This document shows positions 1,350 through 60,228 of a stretch of DNA of 64,000 nt, piece after piece; positions within the stretch are counted from its first letter, which is position 1; every line of letters starts with the position of its first letter. Below the pieces are notes generated by a model. That model was not told the origin of the DNA and ran no database searches. It saw only the letters and a program-made list of their open reading frames with translations. The DNA comes from Salpingoeca rosetta (Eukaryota; Protista; Choanoflagellata). The stretch lies in contig JAWQFM010000012.1 of NCBI GenBank assembly GCA_033442325.1, positions 1,473,793-1,537,792 on the forward strand. Reading direction: 5' to 3'. The position numbers and the translations under genes were made by a program.

Positions 1350-3396
<2,047 letters not shown>

Positions 3397-3624
3397 TGTC
3401 CCGGTTCAAACCTTTGATGAAGCTCAAGACGGAGAAGAGGTGTGTGGTTGCTTGTGAAGGTTGATGAGGACGACGGGCGAGGGAGGCAAAGAAGGAGGCA
3501 GGTGGGCGCTGGTGGACGTGGTGTGGTGTGGATGCTGAGCGAGCGAGCAAGCGGGGATGTTTGGCTGGAGTTTGGACGATTTGTGAATGATTTCATCCAA
3601 TTATCGGCCGACCAAGGAACGACG

Positions 3625-3815
3625 ATGACAAGCAGAGGAACAGCGCAACCACCGTTACAACGCGTGGGTGATCGTGGCGGTGGTGATGACAGTGGTGGTG
3701 GTGGTGATGGCACCAAGAGCCGTGTGCGCGGCAACCACGACAGGGATGCCGACACCACGCAACACACGGATGCTTTGAACGGCATGACGGATGAGAACGA
3801 CTACACGGGGTATTC

Positions 3816-20401: not shown

Positions 20402-22224
20402 CGGAAGACCGAGCACGTGCTGTTGGACGGATGCAACACGATGTCTTTGAACTGATGCGCATGCTGATGATAATCCTGCACCAGTACGTGAAGAAGGGGG
20501 GATACATGATCATTCATGCGCGCGCTGAGCTCACGGGGATGGTGGTCACACACACACTTTCACGGACACCTGCTCTACTGCCTCATGTGATTACCGCACC
20601 TGCTGTAACTGATATGTAGCTCGGGTGCTCCTGACGCTGCGTGGGGNNNNNNNNNNNNNNNNNNNNNNNNNNNNNNNNNNNNNNNNNNNNNNNNNNNNNN
20701 NNNNNNNNNNNNNNNNNNNNNNNNNNNNNNNNNNNNNNNNNNNNNNNNNNNNNNNNNNNNNNNNNNNNNNNNNNNNNNNNNNNNNNNNNNNNNNNNNNNN
20801 NNNNNNNNNNNNNNNNNNNNNNNNNNNNNNNNNNNNNNNNNNNNNNNNNNNNNNNNNNNNNNNNNNNNNNNNNNNNNNNNNNNNNNNNNNNNNNNNNNNN
20901 NNNNNNNNNNNNNNNNNNNNNNNNNNNNNNNNNNNNNNNNNNNNNNNNNNNNNNNNNNNNNNNNNNNNNNNNNNNNNNNNNNNNNNNNNNNNNNNNNNNN
21001 NNNNNNNNNNNNNNNNNNNNNNNNNNNNNNNNNNNNNNNNNNNNNNNNNNNNNNNNNNNNNNNNNNNNNNNNNNNNNNNNNNNNNNNNNNNNNNNNNNNN
21101 NNNNNNNNNNNNNNNNNNNNNNNNNNNNNNNNNNNNNNNNNNNNNNNNNNNNNNNNNNNNNNNNNNNNNNNNNNNNNNNNNNNNNNNNNNNNNNNNNNNN
21201 NNNNNNNNNNNNNNNNNNNNNNNNNNNNNNNNNNNNNNNNNNNNNNNNNNNNNNNNNNNNNNNNNNNNNNNNNNNNNNNNNNNNNNNNNNNNNNNNNNNN
21301 NNNNNNNNNNNNNNNNNNNNNNNNNNNNNNNNNNNNNNNNNNNNNNNNNNNNNNNNNNNNNNNNNNNNNNNNNNNNNNNNNNNNNNNNNNNNNNNNCACA
21401 CACACACGACACACACACACACACAAGAGAGAGAGAGAGACAACCCCCGCAAGCGCAAACACATGCTCACACGTCCACACACACACACGTCCAAACACAC
21501 ACACACACACACACACACTGACCAGGCACGCCGTAGCTCCACGCGAGCGTTGCGATGCGCACGTGGTCTGTGATCGCAAAGGCGTCGCTGGTCGAGCCAT
21601 CCTCAGCATTGTCAGCAGCATTGCTGTCATGGATGCCAGCGCCGCTGCCGTTGTCGTCGTCAAGACAGACACACGGCTGGGAGCCCGGCGCCACCTGCAG
21701 CGTTTTCGTTGGGCCATTCCGCTCCGCCACCGTGAGCACGCCACTGCTGCAGTCGAGGACAAACATAAACGACCGCGGTGTGCGCTCTGTCGGCGGCCAC
21801 GGCATGAGCGTGGCCTTGCCGTACTGCAGCACATCTGCCTTGCAGTCGATAAACACGCCAAGCGGCTTTTTCAGGGCGGCTTGCGTCGGCGTCTGCACAC
21901 CGAGCGCACACACACGATGCGACAGCACTTGCAGCTCCCACGTCAGCTGCCAACACACCGTGACAAATGGGCCAGAGCAGGCGAGGGTGAGGATGAGCGC
22001 TGTTGCGGTGCACCTGGTGTCAGTCAGAGCACACGCACAAACGAATACACGACAACCACAACAAACCACGCCACAAGAATGCCACACACCACACCAGCAC
22101 ACAGAGCATCACAGCACAACGCCCCGCACCAGGCCGCGATCAAATGTGGTGTCAAGGGCAAACACGCCCGGACGAAGCTTGGTGAAGGCCATGTTGGCAA
22201 TGGGAACAAGCTCTGAAGGGCCAT

Positions 22225-45724: not shown

Positions 45725-46077
45725 NNNNNNNNNNNNNNNNNNNNNNNNNNNNNNNNNNNNNNNNNNNNNNNNNNNNNNNNNNNNNNNNNNNNNNNNNNNN
45801 NNNNNNNNNNNNNNNNNNNNNNNNNNNNNNNNNNNNNNNNNNNNNNNNNNNNNNNNNNNNNNNNNNNNNNNNNNNNNNNNNNNNNNNNNNNNNNNNNNNN
45901 NNNNNNNNNNNNNNNNNNNNNNNNNNNNNNNNNNNNNNNNNNNNNNNNNNNNNNNNNNNNNNNNNNNNNNNNNNNNNNNNNNNNNNNNNNNNNNNNNNNN
46001 NNNNNNNNNNNNNNNNNNNNNNNNNNNNNNNNNNNNNNNNNNNNNNNNNNNNNNNNNNNNNNNNNNNNNNNNNNNNN
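45725..46077. other. Assembly gap
   Basis: Run of N. Confidence 1.
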
Positions 46078-48908: not shown

Positions 48909-49348
48909 NNNNNNNNNNNNNNNNNNNNNNNNNNNNNNNNNNNNNNNNNNNNNNNNNNNNNNNNNNNNNNNNNNNNNNNNNNNNNNNNNNNNNNNNNNNN
49001 NNNNNNNNNNNNNNNNNNNNNNNNNNNNNNNNNNNNNNNNNNNNNNNNNNNNNNNNNNNNNNNNNNNNNNNNNNNNNNNNNNNNNNNNNNNNNNNNNNNN
49101 NNNNNNNNNNNNNNNNNNNNNNNNNNNNNNNNNNNNNNNNNNNNNNNNNNNNNNNNNNNNNNNNNNNNNNNNNNNNNNNNNNNNNNNNNNNNNNNNNNNN
49201 NNNNNNNNNNNNNNNNNNNNNNNNNNNNNNNNNNNNNNNNNNNNNNNNNNNNNNNNNNNNNNNNNNNNNNNNNNNNNNNNNNNNNNNNNNNNNNNNNNNN
49301 NNNNNNNNNNNNNNNNNNNNNNNNNNNNNNNNNNNNNNNNNNNNNNNN
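48909..49348. other. Assembly gap
   Basis: Run of N. Confidence 1.
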
Positions 49349-50765: not shown

Positions 50766-52222
50766 ATGAAGCTCATCCACCTGGCCATCGGGCTCGTCGC
50801 CCTGCTGGCCTGCGCCGCAACAATTGGTGCGCTTTTCCCCATCTCCCATCACACGGCACCCGTGTTCTGTGCTACTTGTTCGTCCACGTCTTTTTGCAGT
50901 GCATGCATGCTGCCGTCGCTGTGGCAACCGTTCACAGATTGACCGTTGCACTCACTCACATATGCGCACACACCTGCCTGCCTCCCTGTGTCCACGCATC
51001 CATGCAGCCGCGCAATGCGACTCATCCCAGGACTGCCCAAGCGATGAATACTGCGACATCTACAACAACTGCTACAACTGCAGCGGCTGCTTCGTCTGGC
51101 TGGACGAGATCCGTAAGTCGTGATGTAACGATCCTCGTTGATCATTGTCCATCATTTCCAGCCCTGCTGTTTGTTTGTTGTCTGACCGCACACGCTGTTG
51201 TTGCTCCCGCTGCTGCCTCTTGCCACCCGTTTATTAATCCATCCCTCACCACCACCACGCTCACTATCACTTCCCCCCCCCCGCGTCCATCAGGCACGCA
51301 AAACCGTAAGTTGCCCTCACTCACCGAGTGACGTTGCCGCGTGGCTCTTGGCCTTGTTTCGTGATCGTTGTTGGTAAACTCGCAGAACCTCACCCGCCTG
51401 TTTGATGCCCCTCCTCGTCCTTCTCACCCCTCATCCCTCACCTCAATCTATCCTTCCTGCCCCAAATCTTCCTGCCTGATCAAATATATTCGTTCCATGC
51501 AGCTGGCTACTTCCCCGATACCTGCCCCGAGAAGTGCCGCGATGAGCGCTTCGAGTGCCAATACAGCCCGCACTGCCCTGACAACTCTTACTGCAACACC
51601 AACTACGAATGCAGCGCGTGCGCCGACTGCCCCGCAAACAACGATGGCATCTACGGCCTCCCCTGCCAGGAGTGGTGCATCCAGTTCCTGAGTAAGTCTG
51701 CTTCTTGGCACTGCCCCCTACTCGCTCCATGTAACCCCCCCCCCCCCCCGAATTCCGGCGTATCCCTCGCCATCCATGCATGCATGCATGCGTGTACCCT
51801 CGCTATCTGCCTGCCTGCCTGCCTGCTTCTTGCTTCCTTCCTCTCAACTGTTTTCGGTTCGTGCGCACCATCGTGTCCTCACACCCATCCTCTCCTCTCC
51901 TCTCCTCTCCTCTCTCCTTTCCCTTTCCTTCTCTCGTTCCAGCGACGACAACTGAGGCCAACGTGGAGTGCAACGACCACACGGACTGCGGCGCGACGGA
52001 TTACTGTGACGTGAACAACAACTGCTTCGCCTGCGAGGAGTGCTACCGGTGAGTCCCCTACCCGCCTCCTCTGTGTGTGTGTGTGTGTGTGTTTTCTCGT
52101 CTGACTTGGTTGCTTGCGTGCATGCATGCAAATCAGCGACTGACTCTTTGCTTGGCCTTGTCAACTTTGTCGCGTCGTCCTTGCCCTGTGCGCGGCACTT
52201 GGTCCCTCCGCACTCGCACTCA

Positions 52223-52293
<71 letters not shown>

Positions 52294-52393
52294 NNNNNNN
52301 NNNNNNNNNNNNNNNNNNNNNNNNNNNNNNNNNNNNNNNNNNNNNNNNNNNNNNNNNNNNNNNNNNNNNNNNNNNNNNNNNNNNNNNNNNNNN

Positions 52394-52464
<71 letters not shown>

Positions 52465-55035
52465 GCACACACACTCCACGTGCTTTCGCATCTACAACAG
52501 CGTGCGCGACCCATTTGATGGCTCTGGTGAGTGCCCAGAGAAGTGCCGCAACCAGGACCTCGAGTGTCAGATTAATGAGCACTGCCCCCAGGACTCGTAC
52601 TGCACGGACGGCTTTGCCTGCCAGACATGTGACCAGTGCGCCGTCCTCGACAACGGAGTGTAAGTCCCCATTCCCAGCAGCAGCACGTCAAACTTTGACT
52701 TTGTTTTGTTTGGCTGGAAAAGCACCTTTGTTTGGGATCGCGCTCTGCCCTCTGCCCTTCTCTTGCTTTATTTTGGTATTCTTGTTTCCCAACTCTGTCC
52801 TCGTGGCGCGCTTGCCTTCACACACGCACACCTCAGATCTCACTTGCTCACTCGCACACCAAACCACCAACACCAACAACGACAACGACAACTATTGCAG
52901 GTACGGCTCGGCGTGCGCTGCATGGTGCCCTGGCACGTCCACGAGCAGCTCCACCTCCACCTCCTCCAGCTCGTCCACCACAAGCAGCACTAGCTCCTCG
53001 TCCTCCTCGTCCACAAGCACTAGCTCCTCTTCCTCCTCGTCCACATCCTCCTGGCCCGCCACCACAGACGAAGGCGCCCTTGAGACCACCGACGCCCCGG
53101 CCACAGAGACCACGGAGGCCACGGAGACGACTTCCACCTCTACCTCCACATCCTCGTCCTCCTCCACCTCATCCTCCACATCCTCGTCGTCGTCCTCTGC
53201 CTCGACAGAGGGCAACCAGGGCACAGAGGCCGCGGACACAACAAGCTCCACGTTCACCTCCACCTCCTCTTCTTCGTCCACGTCCTCCTCCACCTCCACT
53301 TCTTCGTCTTCCTCCGCTGCTTCGACTGAGGGCAACGAGGGCACAGAGGCCACGGAGGCTGTTTCCACGTCCACCTCCACCTCCACTTCCTCTTCCTCTT
53401 CTTCCTCCACGTCCTCCTCCACCTCTACTTCTTCGTCTTCCTCCGCTGCTTCGACCGAGGGCAACCAGGGCACAGAGGCCACGGAGGCTGTTTCCACCTC
53501 CACCTCCACTTCCTCTTCCTCTTCCTCTTCCACATCGTCCTCTTCTTCCTCTTCCACATCATCTTCCACCTCGACGTCCACCAACACCGAGACCAGCGGC
53601 TCTCCCGTGACCACAAGCCCCGCCTCAACCACCTCCGAGGAGGCCACCACCACCACGGGCAGCGGCCAGGAGATTGTGTGCAACGTCGACAACTGCTTCG
53701 AGTGCTCGGAGGACAACGTCTGCTCCGTCTGCAAGAACGGGCGCTACCTGTACGATGGCGCCTGCTTCGACACATGCCCCACTGGCTTCACGGGTGTTGG
53801 TCGTGGCAACTTCCGCCGCCGCTGCGAGCAGGTCCCAGACTGCGTTGCCGGCGAGGACGACTGCCACACGTGCTCCCCAGATGGCTCCGAGTGCATCCTC
53901 TGTGCAAACTCGCAGTTCCTTCTCAAGGGCAAGTGCGTCGGTAACTGCCCAGCGGAGCGCTACCGCTCCCGTGGTCGCGGTAACTTCAACAGGTGCGTCA
54001 CACCGCAATGCCGTGCTCCGCTTCATTTACACGTCCATGCATACATGTCTACCGTTGTCGTCTTTCTTTGTTTGTTTTTGTTTTTGTCCCCCCCCCCCCA
54101 TCCCCCACCGCGCTGTGTGTTGCCACACGCGCCACAATCACAAGCGTGCATGTTGCTCGCACATTGATATGTGTGCGTGCGTGCGTGTGTGTGTGTGTTT
54201 GTGTTTGTGTGTGTATCGAGTGCTCACACCCTACCCCGCCCACTTACCTTCCCCTGCTCTTCTTCTTGTCTTCCAACCGTTCCACTCCTCCAATCTCAAT
54301 CTACCAGGTACTGCGAGCCCCTGTACGCGTGCGACATTGTTGGCTGCCACCGCTGCCACCCGATCATGTCCACCTGCCTCCTGTGCCGCGATGGCCTCTA
54401 CCTCCACGATGGCCAGGTACACACTTGCCCATTTGTCGGGCCTGATTCGTCCATCGTGCGGTCCAGCCTGCATGTGATTGCGCCTGTGCTTCATCAATGT
54501 TGCAGCACACCTCATTTGCCATGTGCTCACATCCCTTTCGCGCGCACCCACGACTTACACCTCTGCTGCTGCTGTTCCCTGCAGTGCGTTGAGTCCTGCC
54601 CAGTTGGCCTGACCGCCATCGGCTCTGGCAACTACAACCGCCGCTGCGAGAAGGTCTGCGTCGACAAGCAGAACGACTGCCACACGGTAAGAAAGAACAT
54701 CGTGTCCACCCACCTTTCTTTGTGTGTGTGTGTGTGTGTTTGCTCTTGCTTTTGCGGCGGCCGCCTCTGTGACTCTTGTTGTTGTTGTTTCGTTGCGCTG
54801 ACTGCACGCTGATTCCACTCGCCACTCTTGCTTTTTGTTTGCTCGCACTTGCCTTTGTTCCCCAATTCACCCATCTTCCCGTCTTTGACAGTGCGACCTG
54901 GCGCGTCAGAACTGCGTGCTGTGCGGCAACCGCAAGTCCCTGTTCGAGGGTGTGTGTCTGGATGCGTGCCCTGATGGCTACACTAGCGTTGGCAGGGGCA
55001 ACTTCAACAACCGCTGCATTGCCAATTCTGAGTAA
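50766..55035 (+). CDS. Secreted Cys-rich protein: four N-terminal Cys modules, Ser/Thr mucin stalk, furin-like (FU/R-spondin-type) repeats
   Basis: Signal peptide MKLIHLAIGLVALLACAATI; modules C-x4-C-x4-YC..C-x2-C-x2-C; S/T-rich repeat region at ~52930-53660; repeats C..C..C..YLYDGACFDTCPTG..GRGNFRRRC; stop at 55033-55035; no TM seen. Confidence 0.85.
52294..52393. other. Assembly gap (100 N)
   Basis: Run of N inside an intronic (CA)n tract. Confidence 1.
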
Positions 55036-56136
55036 ACAGCGCGTGCGCTTCCCCTTCCCTCGCTATCACACACACACACACACACATCTATTCACGCACA
55101 ACACACGCAAACCCATGGCAGCCTCTGCCTCCAGTTGTTCCATTCCCCGTGCGCAGCATGCTGCCTTGTCGCACGTGGTTGGTTGACTGGCTGGTGACCT
55201 GCTCTGGCTGCTATTTGTATGTGCTGTGCCGTCTGCCTTGATACATACCTGACCTTCTTCCTGTCTTGCCACATCTCGTGGCCATTCCCTCAAACCTCTT
55301 GTTTGCTTGTTTCTCTGCCAACCATCCTGTCTACTCATTGCTTGCTTGCATGCATGGGGGTTTGCCAGCGGGCGGGTGTCAGCGTTGGCATTGTCTTGCT
55401 GGTGTTGTTCTCTCCCTCTGTGTGGTATAGTGTTCGTGGGTGTTTTGCCGTGGCCTCTTCGTTGGCCTCGCTGCCTTACCTTCTCTTTGTGTCTTGTTCG
55501 TTATCCGGTCTTCACGCATAAAAGCACCCAAATGTCTTGTCACATCACGCAACACAAGAGCAAGCACGCAAGCGCACGTGTTAGCATGGCGCACACAAAC
55601 TCGACGCAAAGTTTGCTTGCTTTGGGCCCAACAGCCGTAATTTCATTTTCGGTCACACATTTTACATCTCATCAACCAGTGCACGACTGCATGCAAGCAA
55701 GCAAAGAGGAATGGAAGGGACACAAGGCAAGCAAGCAAGGCCAGATTCCAGTCCAGAGCATGTAATGAACACGCACCACGCACCACGCACGCACCACGCA
55801 CCATGCGCCACAAGTCTACTGCACGCGTTCGTTGGTATTAAAAAAATCACATGTCAACCCATCAAGTAACAAACAGAGCACCACCACACAATATCACACC
55901 CACACCATTCTCAGCTAATCTCGTGCTACAAGAAAGCATCAAAGCCAGATACAAAGAGGAAAGAGTACAACTATGCTTGAAGCAAAGCAGGCATTGAGAC
56001 AGGGCAAAACGCAAAGGACAGCACAAGCACACAACAGGCGGCACAAGTACGTGACACACACACGCACACAGCGCAACACAACAACACGCATACACAGCAC
56101 AACAACAACACAGCACAAGGCACCGTAGTTGTTCTC

Positions 56137-57080
56137 TCAGCCACTGCCAAGCCAGTCCTCGGAAAACCCCGGCAGCGTTTGCAACGCATGCTTGCACATG
56201 TCTGTGTGCTTGTGCGAGGCAAAGAAGTTGGCAATGCCTTCATCGCCCTGATTGTTGGGCGAGAAATACGGATCGGAGCCGCCAGAGAAGTGGAAGTCGG
56301 GGTTGGTGTATGTCGTGCCCACGCCCTGCACCTTGATCAGCAGCGACGCCCGCTTGCTGTAGAAGTAGCTGAAGCAGCTCAGGCTCTGCGCAGTGGTGTT
56401 GAGCTCGTGAAAGCGCGCCACCCACGACCGGTCGTCGTCGGCGTCCCCGGGGTCCATGTCCTCCTCGCTCACCACCCCGCCAAACGCGTCGTTCCACAGG
56501 CAAAAGTAGTCCAGCAGCCCCGCCGTGTTGTCGCGGTGTGCCGGCGTGTCCTCCAAATCGACCTCGCACAGCGCCCAGGGGCTCTCGTCCACGCCCTCGT
56601 TGGCGGCCGTGCGCGCCGGCAGCTGCAGCGCCTTTGTCTGCACAAACGCCACCCGCTGCGGCGGCGGTGATGTGAAGTTTGCCACGGCAGCGTTGAACGC
56701 CGCAGCGACACTGCGGGCGCGGGCGAGCTTGCGCAATGCAATCAGACACGCCGTCTGCGTCTGCATTGTGTTGTACAGGGGCCATTTCAGGATGTGCGCC
56801 TCCTCCAGGCCTTCAAGGTACGCCGTGTAGCAGTTGAAGTAGTCACCCTGCCGCATGTCCTCTGTGTCATACACATGCACGTGGTAGTCGCCTGAAAGGG
56901 AAACCAAGCACAAGCGTGGTTCAAGTGGACAGGGAGCACGACGACAGGAAGCAGCCACGTGACGTGTGAGTCGTGGAAATGCAACGGTGCAATTTGGGGG
57001 TGGGGGGTGGGGGTGGAAATACAACCATGTAAAACGAGGCACGCGCGCACATGTGCAGCATCGAGGCACAACACATACGC

Positions 57081-57170
<90 letters not shown>

Positions 57171-57997
57171 ACGCACACGCACACACACACGCACACGCAC
57201 ACGCACACGCGCGCACACACACGCGCACGCACGCATGTGCAGCATCGAGGCACAACACATACGCACACGCACACACACACGCGCGCACACACACACAGAC
57301 ACATACACACAGACACATGCACAGACAGATACATGCGCACACACAAGTGAATAACAACAAGATGACAAAACCCACCAGCAAACAACACAACCGATCGGCA
57401 CGCAGACGCCAATACCACAAGCAAAGCAACACCAACAACCAATCAGGCGACTGTGACGGTACCTTCTTGCTTGTGGAGCTGGTCGTTGGTCTCGTCGTAC
57501 GTCCAAATCACTGTTGGCTCCCAGCCCTCAACCACCAAATCCTGCCGCGCTTCAGGCAGCTCACGGCTGTCAAACTGCGACTCTTCATACGTCGAGTCCG
57601 GCCGCTCCATGACGCTCTTGCGATAGTCGCTCGCACTCATGCGCAGCTGGGCTGCACCGTCGCCGCCGCCGCCGCTGCCGCTGCCACTGCTCTCTTGTGA
57701 GGTGGGCCGCTGTGGCACGTGTGGCAGCGTGGCCTGCGTCACCTCCGCCTGTCCACTCGGCCGCTGCGACCACGCGTTGGGCTGGAATGTGCCTGGTGCG
57801 CGCATGCCGGGCATCTCAACAGAGGGGCGCATGGCCTCCCGCGCCGCCAGCGCCCGCGCTTGGCGATCGTCAAGCAGCACGCTGTCCATCGTGCTGGTCC
57901 GTGACAGCTGGTACGTGTTGGCACGGCTGCGCGTCTCCAACGCATTCACGTCAAACGCGGCACTCGCAGGGCCCGTGTACTGGAACACCGCGCCGTT

Positions 57998-58030
<33 letters not shown>

Positions 58031-60018
58031 GCCTTGCTCGGGCGTCTTCGCTGCGGCTGTTGCCTCTGTGGCGGCTGTTGTTACCGTGGCCACCGAGGCC
58101 ACGTCGTCAGCGCTGTGCACGCCGTTGATGCCAGGGGTGATGGTGCTGTTGAAGCCCGCCTTGTGCTCAAAGTTTGACGGCCCGGAGATCATGTCCTTGA
58201 GCGCCGACCGCTGCGACGAAGACGTGCCTGCGCGCGACCGCTTGCTGCTGCTGGTGCTGCCCGTGCTCGCCGTGCTCGCTGTGCGCGCGCTGCGGGGTTT
58301 GGGCAGACGGCTGGTGGTGGGAAGGTGCGGGCGCACAATCTCGCCCGGCGCACGCACGCAGCAGCTAACGAGCATGGCTGTGGCGAGGAGGAAGATGATG
58401 GCGCCCATGTACGCGATGAAGACGAGGCTCGGGGTGTATGCCAGCCCGCCGTGGAAGTAGATGGGGAGCATGACGGCGACGGGGATGAGCAGGAGCACCG
58501 CCGCGTAGATGGCCTCCCCCCAGCGCGGCGGGTACAGCAGCACCGTCAGCACGTGGAAGGGCAGGTTGTGGAAGTGGGTGGCGGTGAGCACGACGCCAGC
58601 GCCCAGCAGGATGCACAGCGGGGAGAGGATGAGGACAAGCATGGCTGTCTCGCCGTCTTCGGAGATGCTGTCTGCAGCCACCAGCGCGGGCAGCAGCACG
58701 CAAAAGGGGATGATGAGCACCAGCACGGCGACGGCGGTGAGCTGGTAGAACATGCGGCGGTCCTTCTCGTAGAACTTGAGGCGGATGATGTCGAGGATGG
58801 TGAGGGCGGGCAGGCCCAGGTTGAACGACAGCAGCACGTCGTGCGCCGCCTGGGAGACGGTCGCCGACCGCAGCACGGGCAACATCACAACCAGCGGCAC
58901 CAGCAGCGCGCACAGCGCAAACTTGACAATGGCGATGCTGGATGCGCGCGAGCATCCCGGGTCTGTGCCATGGAAGACGACGCCGAGGCGATAGGCGACG
59001 TTGTACAGCAGCGACATGCAGCCCGCAAGCAGCATGAAGAACATAAACGCAGCCTGGCCCTCGCCCGTCATCTCATCACCGTGGTGGATGTACACGGGGA
59101 GGAACACGCCCAGCGGGATGCCCACGGCGAGCAGGTAGCCAAAGTAGCCCTTGCGCATCTCGTTGGTGATGACGGCGACGCTATCGAAGCTGGCGCGGTA
59201 GGCGTTCTTCATGCCCATTGCCGACGCCTCCTCAGACTCGAGCACTTTCGGTGTCTGGAAGATGGCGGCGATGAGCGGCAGCCACAGGCCGGGCAGCAGG
59301 ATGGTGGTCCCCAGCAGCACGTTGTACTCTGGCTCGGAGAGCGCCACCTCTCGCAGTATTGGCACCAGGATGAACGCCGGGAGCACCACGCCAAACACGG
59401 GGGCAGCCACCACAATCTCCTGCGTCGACAAGATGTCGCTGTCAATGTCGTACCAGTCTGTGATGGCGCTGCCTGTCCAGATGACGGCAAGCACCCAGTG
59501 CGGTACCAGGGCGAAGAAAATCAGCGCAGCGTTGCCGCCGTGTGACAGATCCTCCACCAGCGCTGGCACCATCATCACAACCAGTGGCCACACTGTGTTG
59601 GAGTCGGAACGAAGCGCGAGGCGTGGGAGGTGGGGAGGGGAGGGGGTGATGCATGTGTGTGAGCATGTGTGTGTGTGCGTGCGTAAGGATGTGCATGTGT
59701 GGGTGTGTGTGGGTGTGTGTGCGTGGGTGCAAGGGTGTGAGTAAGGGTGAGTTGCGCATGCGCATGTGTGCATATGTGTGTGCGCACTTGTGTGTGTGTT
59801 TGTGTTTTGCATGCATGTGGGGACACAAGTGCGTGCACGAACCATGCTCAGCACAACACAACACAACACAATACAACTGCAGCAAAGCGCAACACGTAAT
59901 CAGAGCAGATGCGTCACCATCGCAGAACCAGCGACGCCAACCGCAGCCCACACCATATCACATGCTCACCAAGGAATACAAAGGCCTTGATGGCCAAGTA
60001 GAGCGGGTTGATCTCCAT
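56137..60018 (-). CDS. Polytopic (~12 TM) membrane protein with a C-terminal alpha-kinase-like (probable pseudokinase) domain, 3 exons
   Basis: Exons 60018-59970, ~59592-57463 and 56891-56137 join in frame. The C-terminus [56 protein letters not shown] aligns with the eEF2K/MHCK consensus QAFSHFTY..LLVVDIQGVG..YTDPQIH..GNLG..G...FF..HxCxxxC. Confidence 0.82.

Positions 60019-60154: not shown

Positions 60155-60228
<74 letters not shown>

What the first reader, a model, noticed from the sequence alone, without database searches (positions are those of the whole stretch)
56137..57545. Membrane-tethered alpha-kinase with lost catalytic aspartates and swapped zinc ligands
Seen against the established alpha-kinase consensus: catalytic D of DxQG is K (IKVQGVG), metal-binding D of TDPQ is N (TNPD), and the P-loop is degenerate ([10 protein letters not shown]). 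The zinc site H..HxCxxxC becomes C (SLSCFSY)..HxHxxxC (HKHTDMC), a reciprocal swap that keeps 2 His/2 Cys, suggesting the fold is still selected. Knowledge: the well-known polytopic alpha-kinase fusions are the TRPM6/7 chanzymes. Inference: an independent receptor/channel plus pseudo-alpha-kinase signalling protein.
Basis: partly seen in the sequence, partly recalled or inferred. Interest (0 to 1): 0.72.

Follow-up and report, generated by a model that had tools for sequence, protein, structure and literature searches.

The report
Membrane-anchored dead alpha-kinase of choanoflagellates
A Salpingoeca rosetta gene fuses a 12-helix membrane domain of no known fold to an alpha-kinase domain that has lost its catalytic residues but is kept under selection across choanoflagellates, so it probably acts as a membrane-tethered binding module and not as an enzyme.

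Summary
The window is Salpingoeca rosetta. The finding is the last exon, the last intron and the end of exon 2 of the three-exon gene PTSG_02098 (977 aa, public record "hypothetical protein").

- **Gene model:** a GT..AG, phase-1, (GT)n-rich intron (57462-56892) joins the membrane/linker exon in frame to the kinase exon. The public protein has exactly this junction. Transcriptome ORFs of S. infusionum and Choanoeca flexa carry both domains in one mRNA.
- **Kinase domain:** it matches Pfam Alpha_kinase (78 bits) and folds like MHCK-A (Foldseek E 8e-11).
- **Lost or changed:** catalytic Asp is Lys913, metal Asp is Asn923, the P-loop Arg is Phe745, and the zinc ligands are C899/H953/H955/C959.
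- **Kept:** the ATP-binding Lys762 and Glu836.
- **Family:** no member keeps the metal Asp. In 53 other alpha-kinases both Asp are present. dN/dS against a 77%-identical marine ortholog is about 0.15.
- **Membrane domain:** six two-helix repeats, single copy, found only in choanoflagellates, with no Pfam or PDB match. In acanthoecids it carries a Tudor domain instead of the kinase fold.

Nothing tested supports or excludes "receptor/channel". I read it as a new variant of a known kind, a pseudo-alpha-kinase. RNA reads of S. rosetta itself could not be obtained.

The parts
59970..60018 (-). Exon 1 of PTSG_02098: ATG (60018-60016) and residues 1-16 plus the first base of codon 17; start of TM helix 1
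   Evidence: Exact mapping of public protein P0001 onto the window. The sequence reads ...TTCCTTG|GTGAGC.
59593..59969 (-). Intron 1 (377 nt, GT..AG, phase 1)
   Evidence: Donor G|GTGAGC and acceptor CACAG|TG read. The join gives ...AFVFL-V-WPLVV as in P0001.
57463..59592 (-). Exon 2: residues 17-727. Holds TM helices 1-12 (to about residue 430, about 58352), a low-complexity cytosolic linker (about 431-700), and the N-terminal extension of the kinase domain ([22 protein letters not shown]).
   Evidence: ORF 57443-59869, mapping, AF2 model with 12 long helices at pLDDT 86.5, K/R-rich inside loops and tail.
58352..59592 (-). Membrane domain proper (with exon 1): six two-helix hairpin repeats, the first helix of each carrying P-x5/6-P. 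No Pfam family and no PDB fold match.
   Evidence: HHalign self-alignment: shift of about 157 aa at E 6e-26, shift of about 70 aa at E 1e-11. Conserved prolines. Pfam none. Foldseek best E 0.46. VIA wide best Z 8.2 at rmsd 14. Atlas TM below 0.4.
56892..57462 (-). Intron 2 (571 nt, GT..AG, phase 1), largely (GT)n/(GC) microsatellite. The longest pure run is 57086-57159. An in-frame stop follows at 57445-57443 if the intron is read through.
   Evidence: Sequence read: gaa g|gtaccg ... ccctttcag|gc gac. Dinucleotide runs. The same intron position is seen in P0002 and in TARA locus L004.
56140..56891 (-). Exon 3: residues 727(part)-977, the alpha-kinase-fold domain (Pfam match at residues 741-959 of P0001)
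   Evidence: Pfam. AF2 pLDDT 85, pTM 0.86. Foldseek top hits are MHCK-A, TRPM7 kinase and eEF2K.
56137..56139 (-). Stop codon TGA
56785..56787 (-). Lys762 (VLKWP): the retained ATP-binding lysine
   Evidence: Aligned with FVLKL of MHCK-A and with the y-V-a-K column of canonical kinases. It is Lys in all 9 family members that cover the column.
56374..56376 (-). Cys899 (LSCFSY): zinc ligand 1, His in canonical alpha-kinases
56332..56334 (-). Lys913 (IKVQG): the position of the catalytic Asp (D1767 of human TRPM7)
   Evidence: Residue roles from review PMC2827801.
56302..56304 (-). Asn923 (TNPD): the position of the Mg-binding Asp (D1777 of human TRPM7)
56194..56214 (-). H953-K-H955-T-D-M-C959: zinc module, HxHxxxC in place of HxCxxxC

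Best explanation
One three-exon gene (Salpingoeca rosetta PTSG_02098, minus strand, 60018-56137) encodes a 977-residue protein with three parts. (i) An N-terminal 12-helix membrane domain built from six helical-hairpin repeats. (ii) A roughly 270-residue low-complexity cytosolic linker. (iii) A C-terminal domain with the alpha-kinase fold.

The fold and its zinc module (now Cys-His-His-Cys) are maintained by selection. So are the nucleotide-pocket Lys762 and Glu836. Four catalytic elements are gone or degenerate: the catalytic base Asp is Lys, the Mg-binding Asp is Asn, the P-loop Arg is Phe, and the Gly-rich substrate loop reads SPNNQG. The domain therefore cannot carry out canonical phosphotransfer.

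Shown here: the gene structure, the homology, the fold, the substitutions, their conservation, and the cytosolic orientation by the positive-inside rule.

Inferred: the dead kinase fold works as a membrane-tethered binding or scaffolding module that recruits a cytosolic partner to the membrane domain. In sister lineages the same membrane domain carries a Tudor reader domain in that place, which argues that the C-terminal module's job is recognition and not catalysis. What the membrane domain itself does is unknown.
For: Organism and gene:
- 100% match to NCBI PTSG_02098, 977 aa, Pfam PF02816.
- Exon mapping and in-frame GT..AG junctions.

One mRNA:
- Complete transcriptome ORFs of S. infusionum (914 aa) and Choanoeca flexa (919 aa), and the Monosiga brevicollis protein (935 aa), carry both domains.
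- TARA contig L006 has the membrane ORF followed on the same strand by the kinase ORF.
- The intron position is shared with P0002 and L004.

Homology and fold:
- Pfam 78 bits.
- AF2 pLDDT 85, pTM 0.86.
- Foldseek MHCK-A E 7.9e-11, TM 0.63; also TRPM7 kinase and eEF2K.

Residues:
-.
- No family member has the metal Asp. The catalytic Asp is K, N or S in 12 of 14. In 53 of 53 outside representatives both positions are Asp.
- The family's kinase domains form one group, SH-aLRT 99.

Selection: dN/dS 0.14-0.15 against a 77%-identical ortholog.

Topology: K+R-rich inside loops and tail.

Membrane module with Tudor instead of, or besides, the kinase fold.

Precedent for a non-catalytic alpha-kinase domain: ALPK3 (PMC9698156).
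Against: - No RNA or protein data from S. rosetta itself.
- Loss of activity is inferred from sequence only, and some predicted pseudokinases have turned out to be active by unusual mechanisms.
- Lys762 and Glu836 are retained, which could mean nucleotide binding still matters.
- The binding partner is unknown, and so is the activity of the membrane domain.
- The Tudor/kinase alternation is an argument by analogy.
- The AF2 models rest on shallow alignments (14 and 27 rows).
Confidence: 0.65

Rival explanations
1. Ligand sensor. The dead kinase fold still binds a nucleotide or another small phosphorylated ligand through the retained Lys762/Glu836 pocket, without Mg and without transfer. It allosterically controls whatever the 12-helix domain does. 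In this reading it works like nucleotide-binding pseudokinases, and is not a pure scaffold.
For: Lys762 is Lys in all 9 family members that cover that column, and Glu836 is Glu in all 11 that cover it. A Lys sits at the catalytic-Asp position in the S. rosetta, TARA and S. infusionum proteins and could neutralise phosphate charge in place of Mg (inference). The pocket-forming fold is predicted with high confidence.
Against: The P-loop Arg that contacts the phosphates is lost. The Lys at the catalytic position is Asn in most family members. No binding data exist.
Confidence: 0.2
2. Non-canonical active kinase. The domain still phosphorylates proteins, using other residues in place of the two aspartates.
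For: Precedents exist among eukaryotic protein kinases once called pseudokinases (general knowledge). The fold, Lys762, Glu836 and Gln915 are retained.
Against: Four separate catalytic elements are changed at once: base Asp, metal Asp, P-loop Arg and Gly-rich loop. The replacement residues are not the same across the family (K/N/S at the base position; N/S/C/G/T/L/I at the metal position), which is not the pattern of a conserved alternative active site.
Confidence: 0.08
3. Annotation artefact or decaying gene. The kinase exon is a separate transcript or a pseudogene remnant lying next to an unrelated membrane-protein gene.
For: A stop codon follows directly after exon 2 if the intron is read through. 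The intron is a microsatellite. No S. rosetta reads were examined.
Against: The GT..AG join is in frame. Orthologous complete transcriptome ORFs carry both domains in two species, and the Monosiga gene model does too. The same gene order occurs on a marine contig. The intron position is conserved. dN/dS is 0.15. Exon 3 has no start of its own before the domain's first strands.
Confidence: 0.03

Closest known systems
TRPM6/TRPM7 channel-kinases (chanzymes)
   Same: A polytopic membrane protein with a long cytosolic Ser/Thr-rich linker and a C-terminal alpha-kinase-fold domain. The TRPM7 kinase domain is among the best sequence and structure matches.
   Different: The membrane part is not a TRP channel. 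It has 12 helices in six hairpin repeats, with no Pfam, TRP or ion-transport hit and no PDB fold match. The kinase domain lacks both catalytic Asp, whereas TRPM6/7 are active kinases (PMC2827801). The fusion is an independent event found only in choanoflagellates.
[quoted passage not shown]
   Same: An alpha-kinase fold retained under selection for a non-catalytic, scaffolding role.
   Different: ALPK3 keeps the predicted catalytic Asp (D1774) and differs at four other conserved cleft residues. Here the catalytic and metal Asp themselves are replaced. ALPK3 is a vertebrate muscle protein that is not built on a multi-pass membrane domain. The present family is choanoflagellate-specific.
Canonical alpha-kinases: Dictyostelium MHCK-A, eEF2K, and the second S. 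rosetta alpha-kinase on contig 7
   Same: The same fold (Foldseek TM about 0.6). The same Lys, Glu, Gln of DxQG, Pro of TDP, and a C-terminal zinc module.
   Different: D to K, D to N, P-loop R to F, Gly-rich loop degenerate, zinc ligands C/H/H/C in place of H/H/C/C. The S. rosetta paralog keeps DLQG, TDP and HKCNHIC.
Membrane module plus SMN-type Tudor proteins of acanthoecid choanoflagellates (Helgoeca nana P0095, Savillea parva P0011)
   Same: A homologous 12-helix hairpin-repeat domain (phmmer E 1e-47 to 1e-39) with a cytosolic C-terminal module after a disordered linker.
   Different: The C-terminal module is a Tudor domain and no alpha-kinase remnant is detectable. One environmental protein (P0015) has both.

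Membership tests
Alpha-kinase family (Pfam PF02816), homology | Profile match above the curated gathering score over the whole domain | tested here: met
   78.4 bits against a cut-off of 21.3, profile 2-185/185. 75.9 bits on the full protein.
Alpha-kinase family (Pfam PF02816), homology | Alpha-kinase two-lobe fold | tested here: met
   AF2 pLDDT 85, pTM 0.86. All 43 Foldseek matches with E <= 0.001 are alpha-kinase chains, the best being MHCK-A at E 7.9e-11, TM 0.63.
Catalytically competent alpha-kinases | Invariant ATP-binding Lys (K1648 of human TRPM7) | tested here: met
   Lys762 in VLKWP aligns with the Lys column.
Catalytically competent alpha-kinases | Catalytic Asp of DxQG (D1767 of human TRPM7) | tested here: not met
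   Lys913 (IKVQG). Asp in 53 of 53 outside representatives.
Catalytically competent alpha-kinases | Mg-binding Asp of TDP (D1777 of human TRPM7) | tested here: not met
   Asn923 (TNPD). Never Asp in any of the 14 family members.
Catalytically competent alpha-kinases | Zinc module His...His-x-Cys-x3-Cys | tested here: inconclusive
   Four potential ligands are present but permuted: C899, H953, H955, C959. Metal binding cannot be tested with these tools. The same pattern occurs in Asp-intact kinases.
Catalytically competent alpha-kinases | Phosphotransfer activity | not testable with these tools
   Needs an in vitro kinase assay.
TRPM6/7 chanzymes | TRP-type six-helix channel domain with melastatin homology region | tested here: not met
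   No Pfam family on residues 1-727. 12 helices in six repeats. No TRP chain among the fold matches.
TRPM6/7 chanzymes | C-terminal alpha-kinase domain on the cytosolic side | tested here: met
   Domain at residues 741-959. C-terminus predicted inside by the K/R distribution.
Choanoflagellate 12-TM hairpin-repeat family (unnamed, defined here) | Six P-x5-P hairpin repeats, homologous over about 430 residues | tested here: met
   phmmer E 1e-168 to 1e-31 to more than 15 proteins. Self-repeat by HHalign. Named members are all choanoflagellates. Single copy in the S. rosetta genome.

The most novel reading that the evidence does not exclude
The 12-helix hairpin-repeat domain is a new membrane-protein fold with an activity of its own, such as a single-chain ring or arc that transports, conducts or senses something at the choanoflagellate surface. 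Its cytosolic output or reader module has been exchanged during evolution between a dead alpha-kinase fold and a Tudor domain. That would make it a second lineage of membrane-protein/alpha-kinase fusions, independent of TRPM6/7, in the closest relatives of animals.
Probability: 0.15. Interest if true: 0.8.

Novelty: new variant of a known kind. Interest (0 to 1): 0.55.

Why it matters
Alpha-kinases are a small atypical kinase family. Until 2022 no pseudokinase was recognised among them, and the one described (ALPK3) still has its catalytic Asp. This choanoflagellate family is a cleaner natural case: both aspartates are gone, while the fold, the zinc module and the nucleotide-pocket Lys and Glu are conserved under purifying selection. 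It can show what an alpha-kinase fold does when it does not phosphorylate.

It is also the only polytopic-membrane fusion of this fold found here outside TRPM6/7, and it arose independently in the sister group of animals. Its membrane domain is confidently modelled, yet has no relative in Pfam or the PDB and no published description found. That makes it a tractable target in S. rosetta, where CRISPR editing and transfection are established (stated from general knowledge).

Tried and rejected
- **RNA evidence from S. rosetta itself.** The one-mRNA question rests on the public gene model, orthologous transcriptome ORFs and conserved intron positions.
- **First guess on the organism.** From the CA repeats I took it for a kinetoplastid, with no introns and two genes. 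The GT..AG in-frame join and the 100% hit to S. rosetta rejected this.
- **Joined model.** Exons were searched by reference. The joined sequence used later is the public record P0001 returned.
- **Membrane-domain identity.** Pfam gave nothing on 18 proteins. The ESM Atlas gave nothing by features and TM <= 0.38 by structure. Foldseek PDB best E was 0.46. The Atlas shape search gave TM below 0.4, with alpha-solenoids nearest. VIA wide gave a best Z of 8.2 at rmsd 14 (EccD5), with designed circular repeat proteins and SemiSWEET at Z about 7.6-7.8, all below the tool's own threshold for helical proteins. The profile word search with alignment A2 added nothing.
- **Kinase remnant in the Tudor-type members.** None was detected with a family HMM.
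- **Linker motifs.** SNFEHxAGF and APGTF are shared only with the closest relative, not across the family.
- **'vWA' label for the paralog.** Pfam does not confirm it.
- **Literature.** No paper mentions PTSG_02098. Searches on choanoflagellate alpha-kinases found nothing on this family.
- **Model coordinates.** They are not available to scripts, so the zinc-site geometry and the helix packing could not be inspected.

Full report
**What is there**

The window is contig 12 of a 55.4-Mb genome. The 808-codon minus-strand ORF next to the finding matches NCBI protein PTSG_02098 of Salpingoeca rosetta at 100% (P0001, 977 aa, "hypothetical protein", Pfam PF02816 precomputed).

Mapping P0001 back onto the window gives three exons:
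- Exon 1: 60018-59970.
- Exon 2: 59592-57463.
- Exon 3: 56891-56140, with the stop at 56139-56137.

Both introns are GT..AG and phase 1. Intron 2 (57462-56892, 571 nt) is mostly (GT)n. That is why the mechanical ORF list shows a 433-codon ORF whose first 180 codons are Cys/Val repeats. The finding's coordinates (56137-57545) cover the end of exon 2, intron 2 and exon 3.

They were searched one by one by reference. The joined protein used afterwards is the public record that one search returned.

**Are the membrane part and the kinase part one gene?**

- The splice is in frame, and the public model uses it (...[14 protein letters not shown]...).
- Complete transcriptome ORFs of Salpingoeca infusionum (P0004, 914 aa) and Choanoeca flexa (P0005, 919 aa) carry both domains. 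So does the Monosiga brevicollis protein (P0006, 935 aa).
- On a TARA Oceans contig the membrane ORF is followed on the same strand, 56 nt later, by the kinase ORF (L006).
- The intron sits at the same codon and phase in a Logan relative (P0002 ends ...QEG and runs into intron). It does so too in the TARA ortholog of the kinase exon (tttgcag|ag gac...).

**The kinase domain**

Pfam Alpha_kinase matches end to end (E 9.7e-22, 78 bits, cut-off 21.3). An AlphaFold2 model from a 14-row family alignment has pLDDT 85 and pTM 0.86. All 43 of its Foldseek matches with E <= 0.001 are alpha-kinase chains: MHCK-A (E 7.9e-11, TM 0.63), the Entamoeba alpha-kinase, the TRPM7 kinase, eEF2K and ALPK1.

HMMER alignments to these chains and alignments with 53 other alpha-kinase representatives fix the key positions. 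Residue roles follow the review PMC2827801, which gives invariant K1648, D1767 and D1777 and zinc Cys 1812/1816 of human TRPM7.

| Element | Canonical | PTSG_02098 |
|---|---|---|
| ATP-binding Lys | Lys | Lys762, kept |
| Glu | Glu | Glu836, kept |
| P-loop | G-x-x-R | G742...Phe745 |
| Zinc ligand 1 | His | Cys899 |
| Catalytic Asp | Asp | Lys913 |
| Gln of DxQG | Gln | Gln915, kept |
| Metal Asp | Asp | Asn923 |
| Gly-rich loop | GxGNLG | SPNNQG |
| Zinc module | HxCxxxC | H953-x-H955-xxx-C959 |

**More than chance, and not decay**

The exhaustive search with P0001 found 89 proteins. Fourteen carry this divergent kinase domain. The tabulation shows:
- None has Asp at the metal position (N, S, C, G, T, L or I instead).
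- The catalytic position is K in three, N in eight and S in one. It is D only in the two long-branch members, S. kvevrii and P0015.
- Zinc ligand 1 is Cys in 13 of 14.
- Outside the family, 53 of 53 representatives have Asp at both positions.

In a quick maximum-likelihood tree the 11 family domains of at least 190 residues form one group on a long stem (SH-aLRT 99). That tree had 50 rows. Fragments under 190 residues, P0019 and P0091 were left out, and only the quick search finished.

Against the TARA ortholog (77% identity over 245 codons) dN/dS is 0.14-0.15 at dS of about 1.2. The only other Alpha_kinase hit in the S. rosetta genome (contig 7, 145 bits) keeps DLQG, TDP and HKCNHIC.

So this is an old, selected, catalytically disabled clade. 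It is neither a recent pseudogene nor a sequencing artefact.

**The zinc "swap"**

The permutation H/H/C/C to C/H/H/C is real and is the family consensus. It is not linked to the loss of catalysis. Nine of the 53 Asp-intact representatives have Tyr or Cys at ligand 1, and 8 of those 9 also have His in place of the first Cys of the module. A few family members have lost the site altogether (P0009, P0015). Whether zinc is bound cannot be tested here.

**The membrane domain**

Residues 1-430 give 12 long helices in an AlphaFold2 model (pLDDT 86.5, pTM 0.79, 27-row alignment).

- **Repeats.** Profile self-alignment shows internal repeats with a period of about 157 residues (E 6e-26) and about 70 residues (E 1e-11). 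That is six two-helix hairpins grouped as three four-helix units. The first helix of each hairpin carries two conserved prolines five or six residues apart.
- **Conserved polar residues.** They are few and lie near helix ends: E75, E161, R218, R287.
- **Topology.** Lys and Arg cluster in the loops after helices 4, 6 and 8 and in the tail after helix 12. The hairpin loops are short and acidic. This puts both termini, the linker and the kinase fold in the cytosol.
- **No known relative.** Pfam gave nothing. Foldseek against the PDB gave a best E of 0.46. VIA-align wide gave a best Z of 8.2 at rmsd 14 Å, below the tool's own bar for helical proteins. The ESM Atlas gave TM below 0.4.
- **Weak matches.** The nearest ones are solenoids, designed circular repeat proteins and helical barrels. 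They hint at a curved or closed array of hairpins, but I could not inspect the coordinates.
- **Distribution.** The domain is single-copy in S. rosetta. Every named homologue is a choanoflagellate: Salpingoeca, Monosiga, Choanoeca, Savillea, Helgoeca.

**A clue to function**

In the acanthoecids Helgoeca nana (P0095) and Savillea parva (P0011), and in environmental relatives (P0012), the same membrane domain and a disordered linker are followed by an SMN-type Tudor domain. No alpha-kinase remnant is detectable in them. One environmental protein has the membrane domain, an alpha-kinase fold and a Tudor domain (P0015).

The C-terminal position is thus occupied either by a reader domain or by a kinase fold that cannot catalyse. 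This fits best with a recognition or recruitment role for that module. ALPK3 is the published precedent for a non-catalytic alpha-kinase domain, although it keeps its catalytic Asp (PMC9698156).

**Verdict**

The words "receptor/channel" are not backed by anything I could test.

My best explanation is a membrane-tethered, catalytically dead alpha-kinase fold acting as a binding or scaffold module (0.65). The main rival is a nucleotide or ligand sensor using the retained Lys/Glu pocket (0.2). Residual non-canonical activity (0.08) and an annotation artefact (0.03) are unlikely.

The gene and its Pfam domain are in public databases. I found no paper on the gene or the family. I rate it a new variant of a known kind, with an undescribed membrane domain as a bonus.

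Noticed in passing
P0095 (Helgoeca nana), P0011 (Savillea parva), P0012, P0015; no window coordinates: The same 12-helix hairpin-repeat membrane domain carries an SMN-type Tudor domain at its C-terminus in acanthoecid choanoflagellates. One environmental protein has membrane domain + Alpha_kinase + Tudor, which suggests modular exchange or differential loss of the cytosolic module.
   Followed up: partly
P0038, P0041, P0046, P0048, P0050, P0051, P0059, P0073, P0079 (environmental alpha-kinases): These are catalytically intact alpha-kinases (D-x-Q-G and T-D-P present) with Tyr or Cys in place of the first zinc-ligand His, and in 8 of the 9 also His in place of the first Cys of the module. The canonical H/H/C/C zinc site is therefore less invariant than reviews state.
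   Followed up: partly
L001 (G000 contig 7, 1846628-1850269), ORF 1468-3639 minus: This is the only other Alpha_kinase hit in the S. rosetta genome. It is canonical (145 bits; DLQG, TDP, HKCNHIC). Its N-terminal half reads vWA-like (LLDATGGM), but Pfam gave no vWA hit.
   Followed up: partly
window 52077-54167 (+): Long ORF with hundreds of Ser/Thr repeats followed by Cys-rich Furin-like_2 repeats (32.6 bits), probably part of a mucin-like surface protein. It is interrupted by a 100-N assembly gap at 52294-52393.
   Followed up: partly
window 20647-21396, 45725-46077, 48909-49348, 52294-52393: Runs of N (assembly gaps). They explain the apparent low-GC bins in the composition profile.
   Followed up: yes
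window 57086-57159, 60162-60227, 55067-55086: (CA)n/(GT)n microsatellites fill the introns and flanks of this gene. They create long spurious Cys/Val or His/Thr ORFs in several frames.
   Followed up: yes
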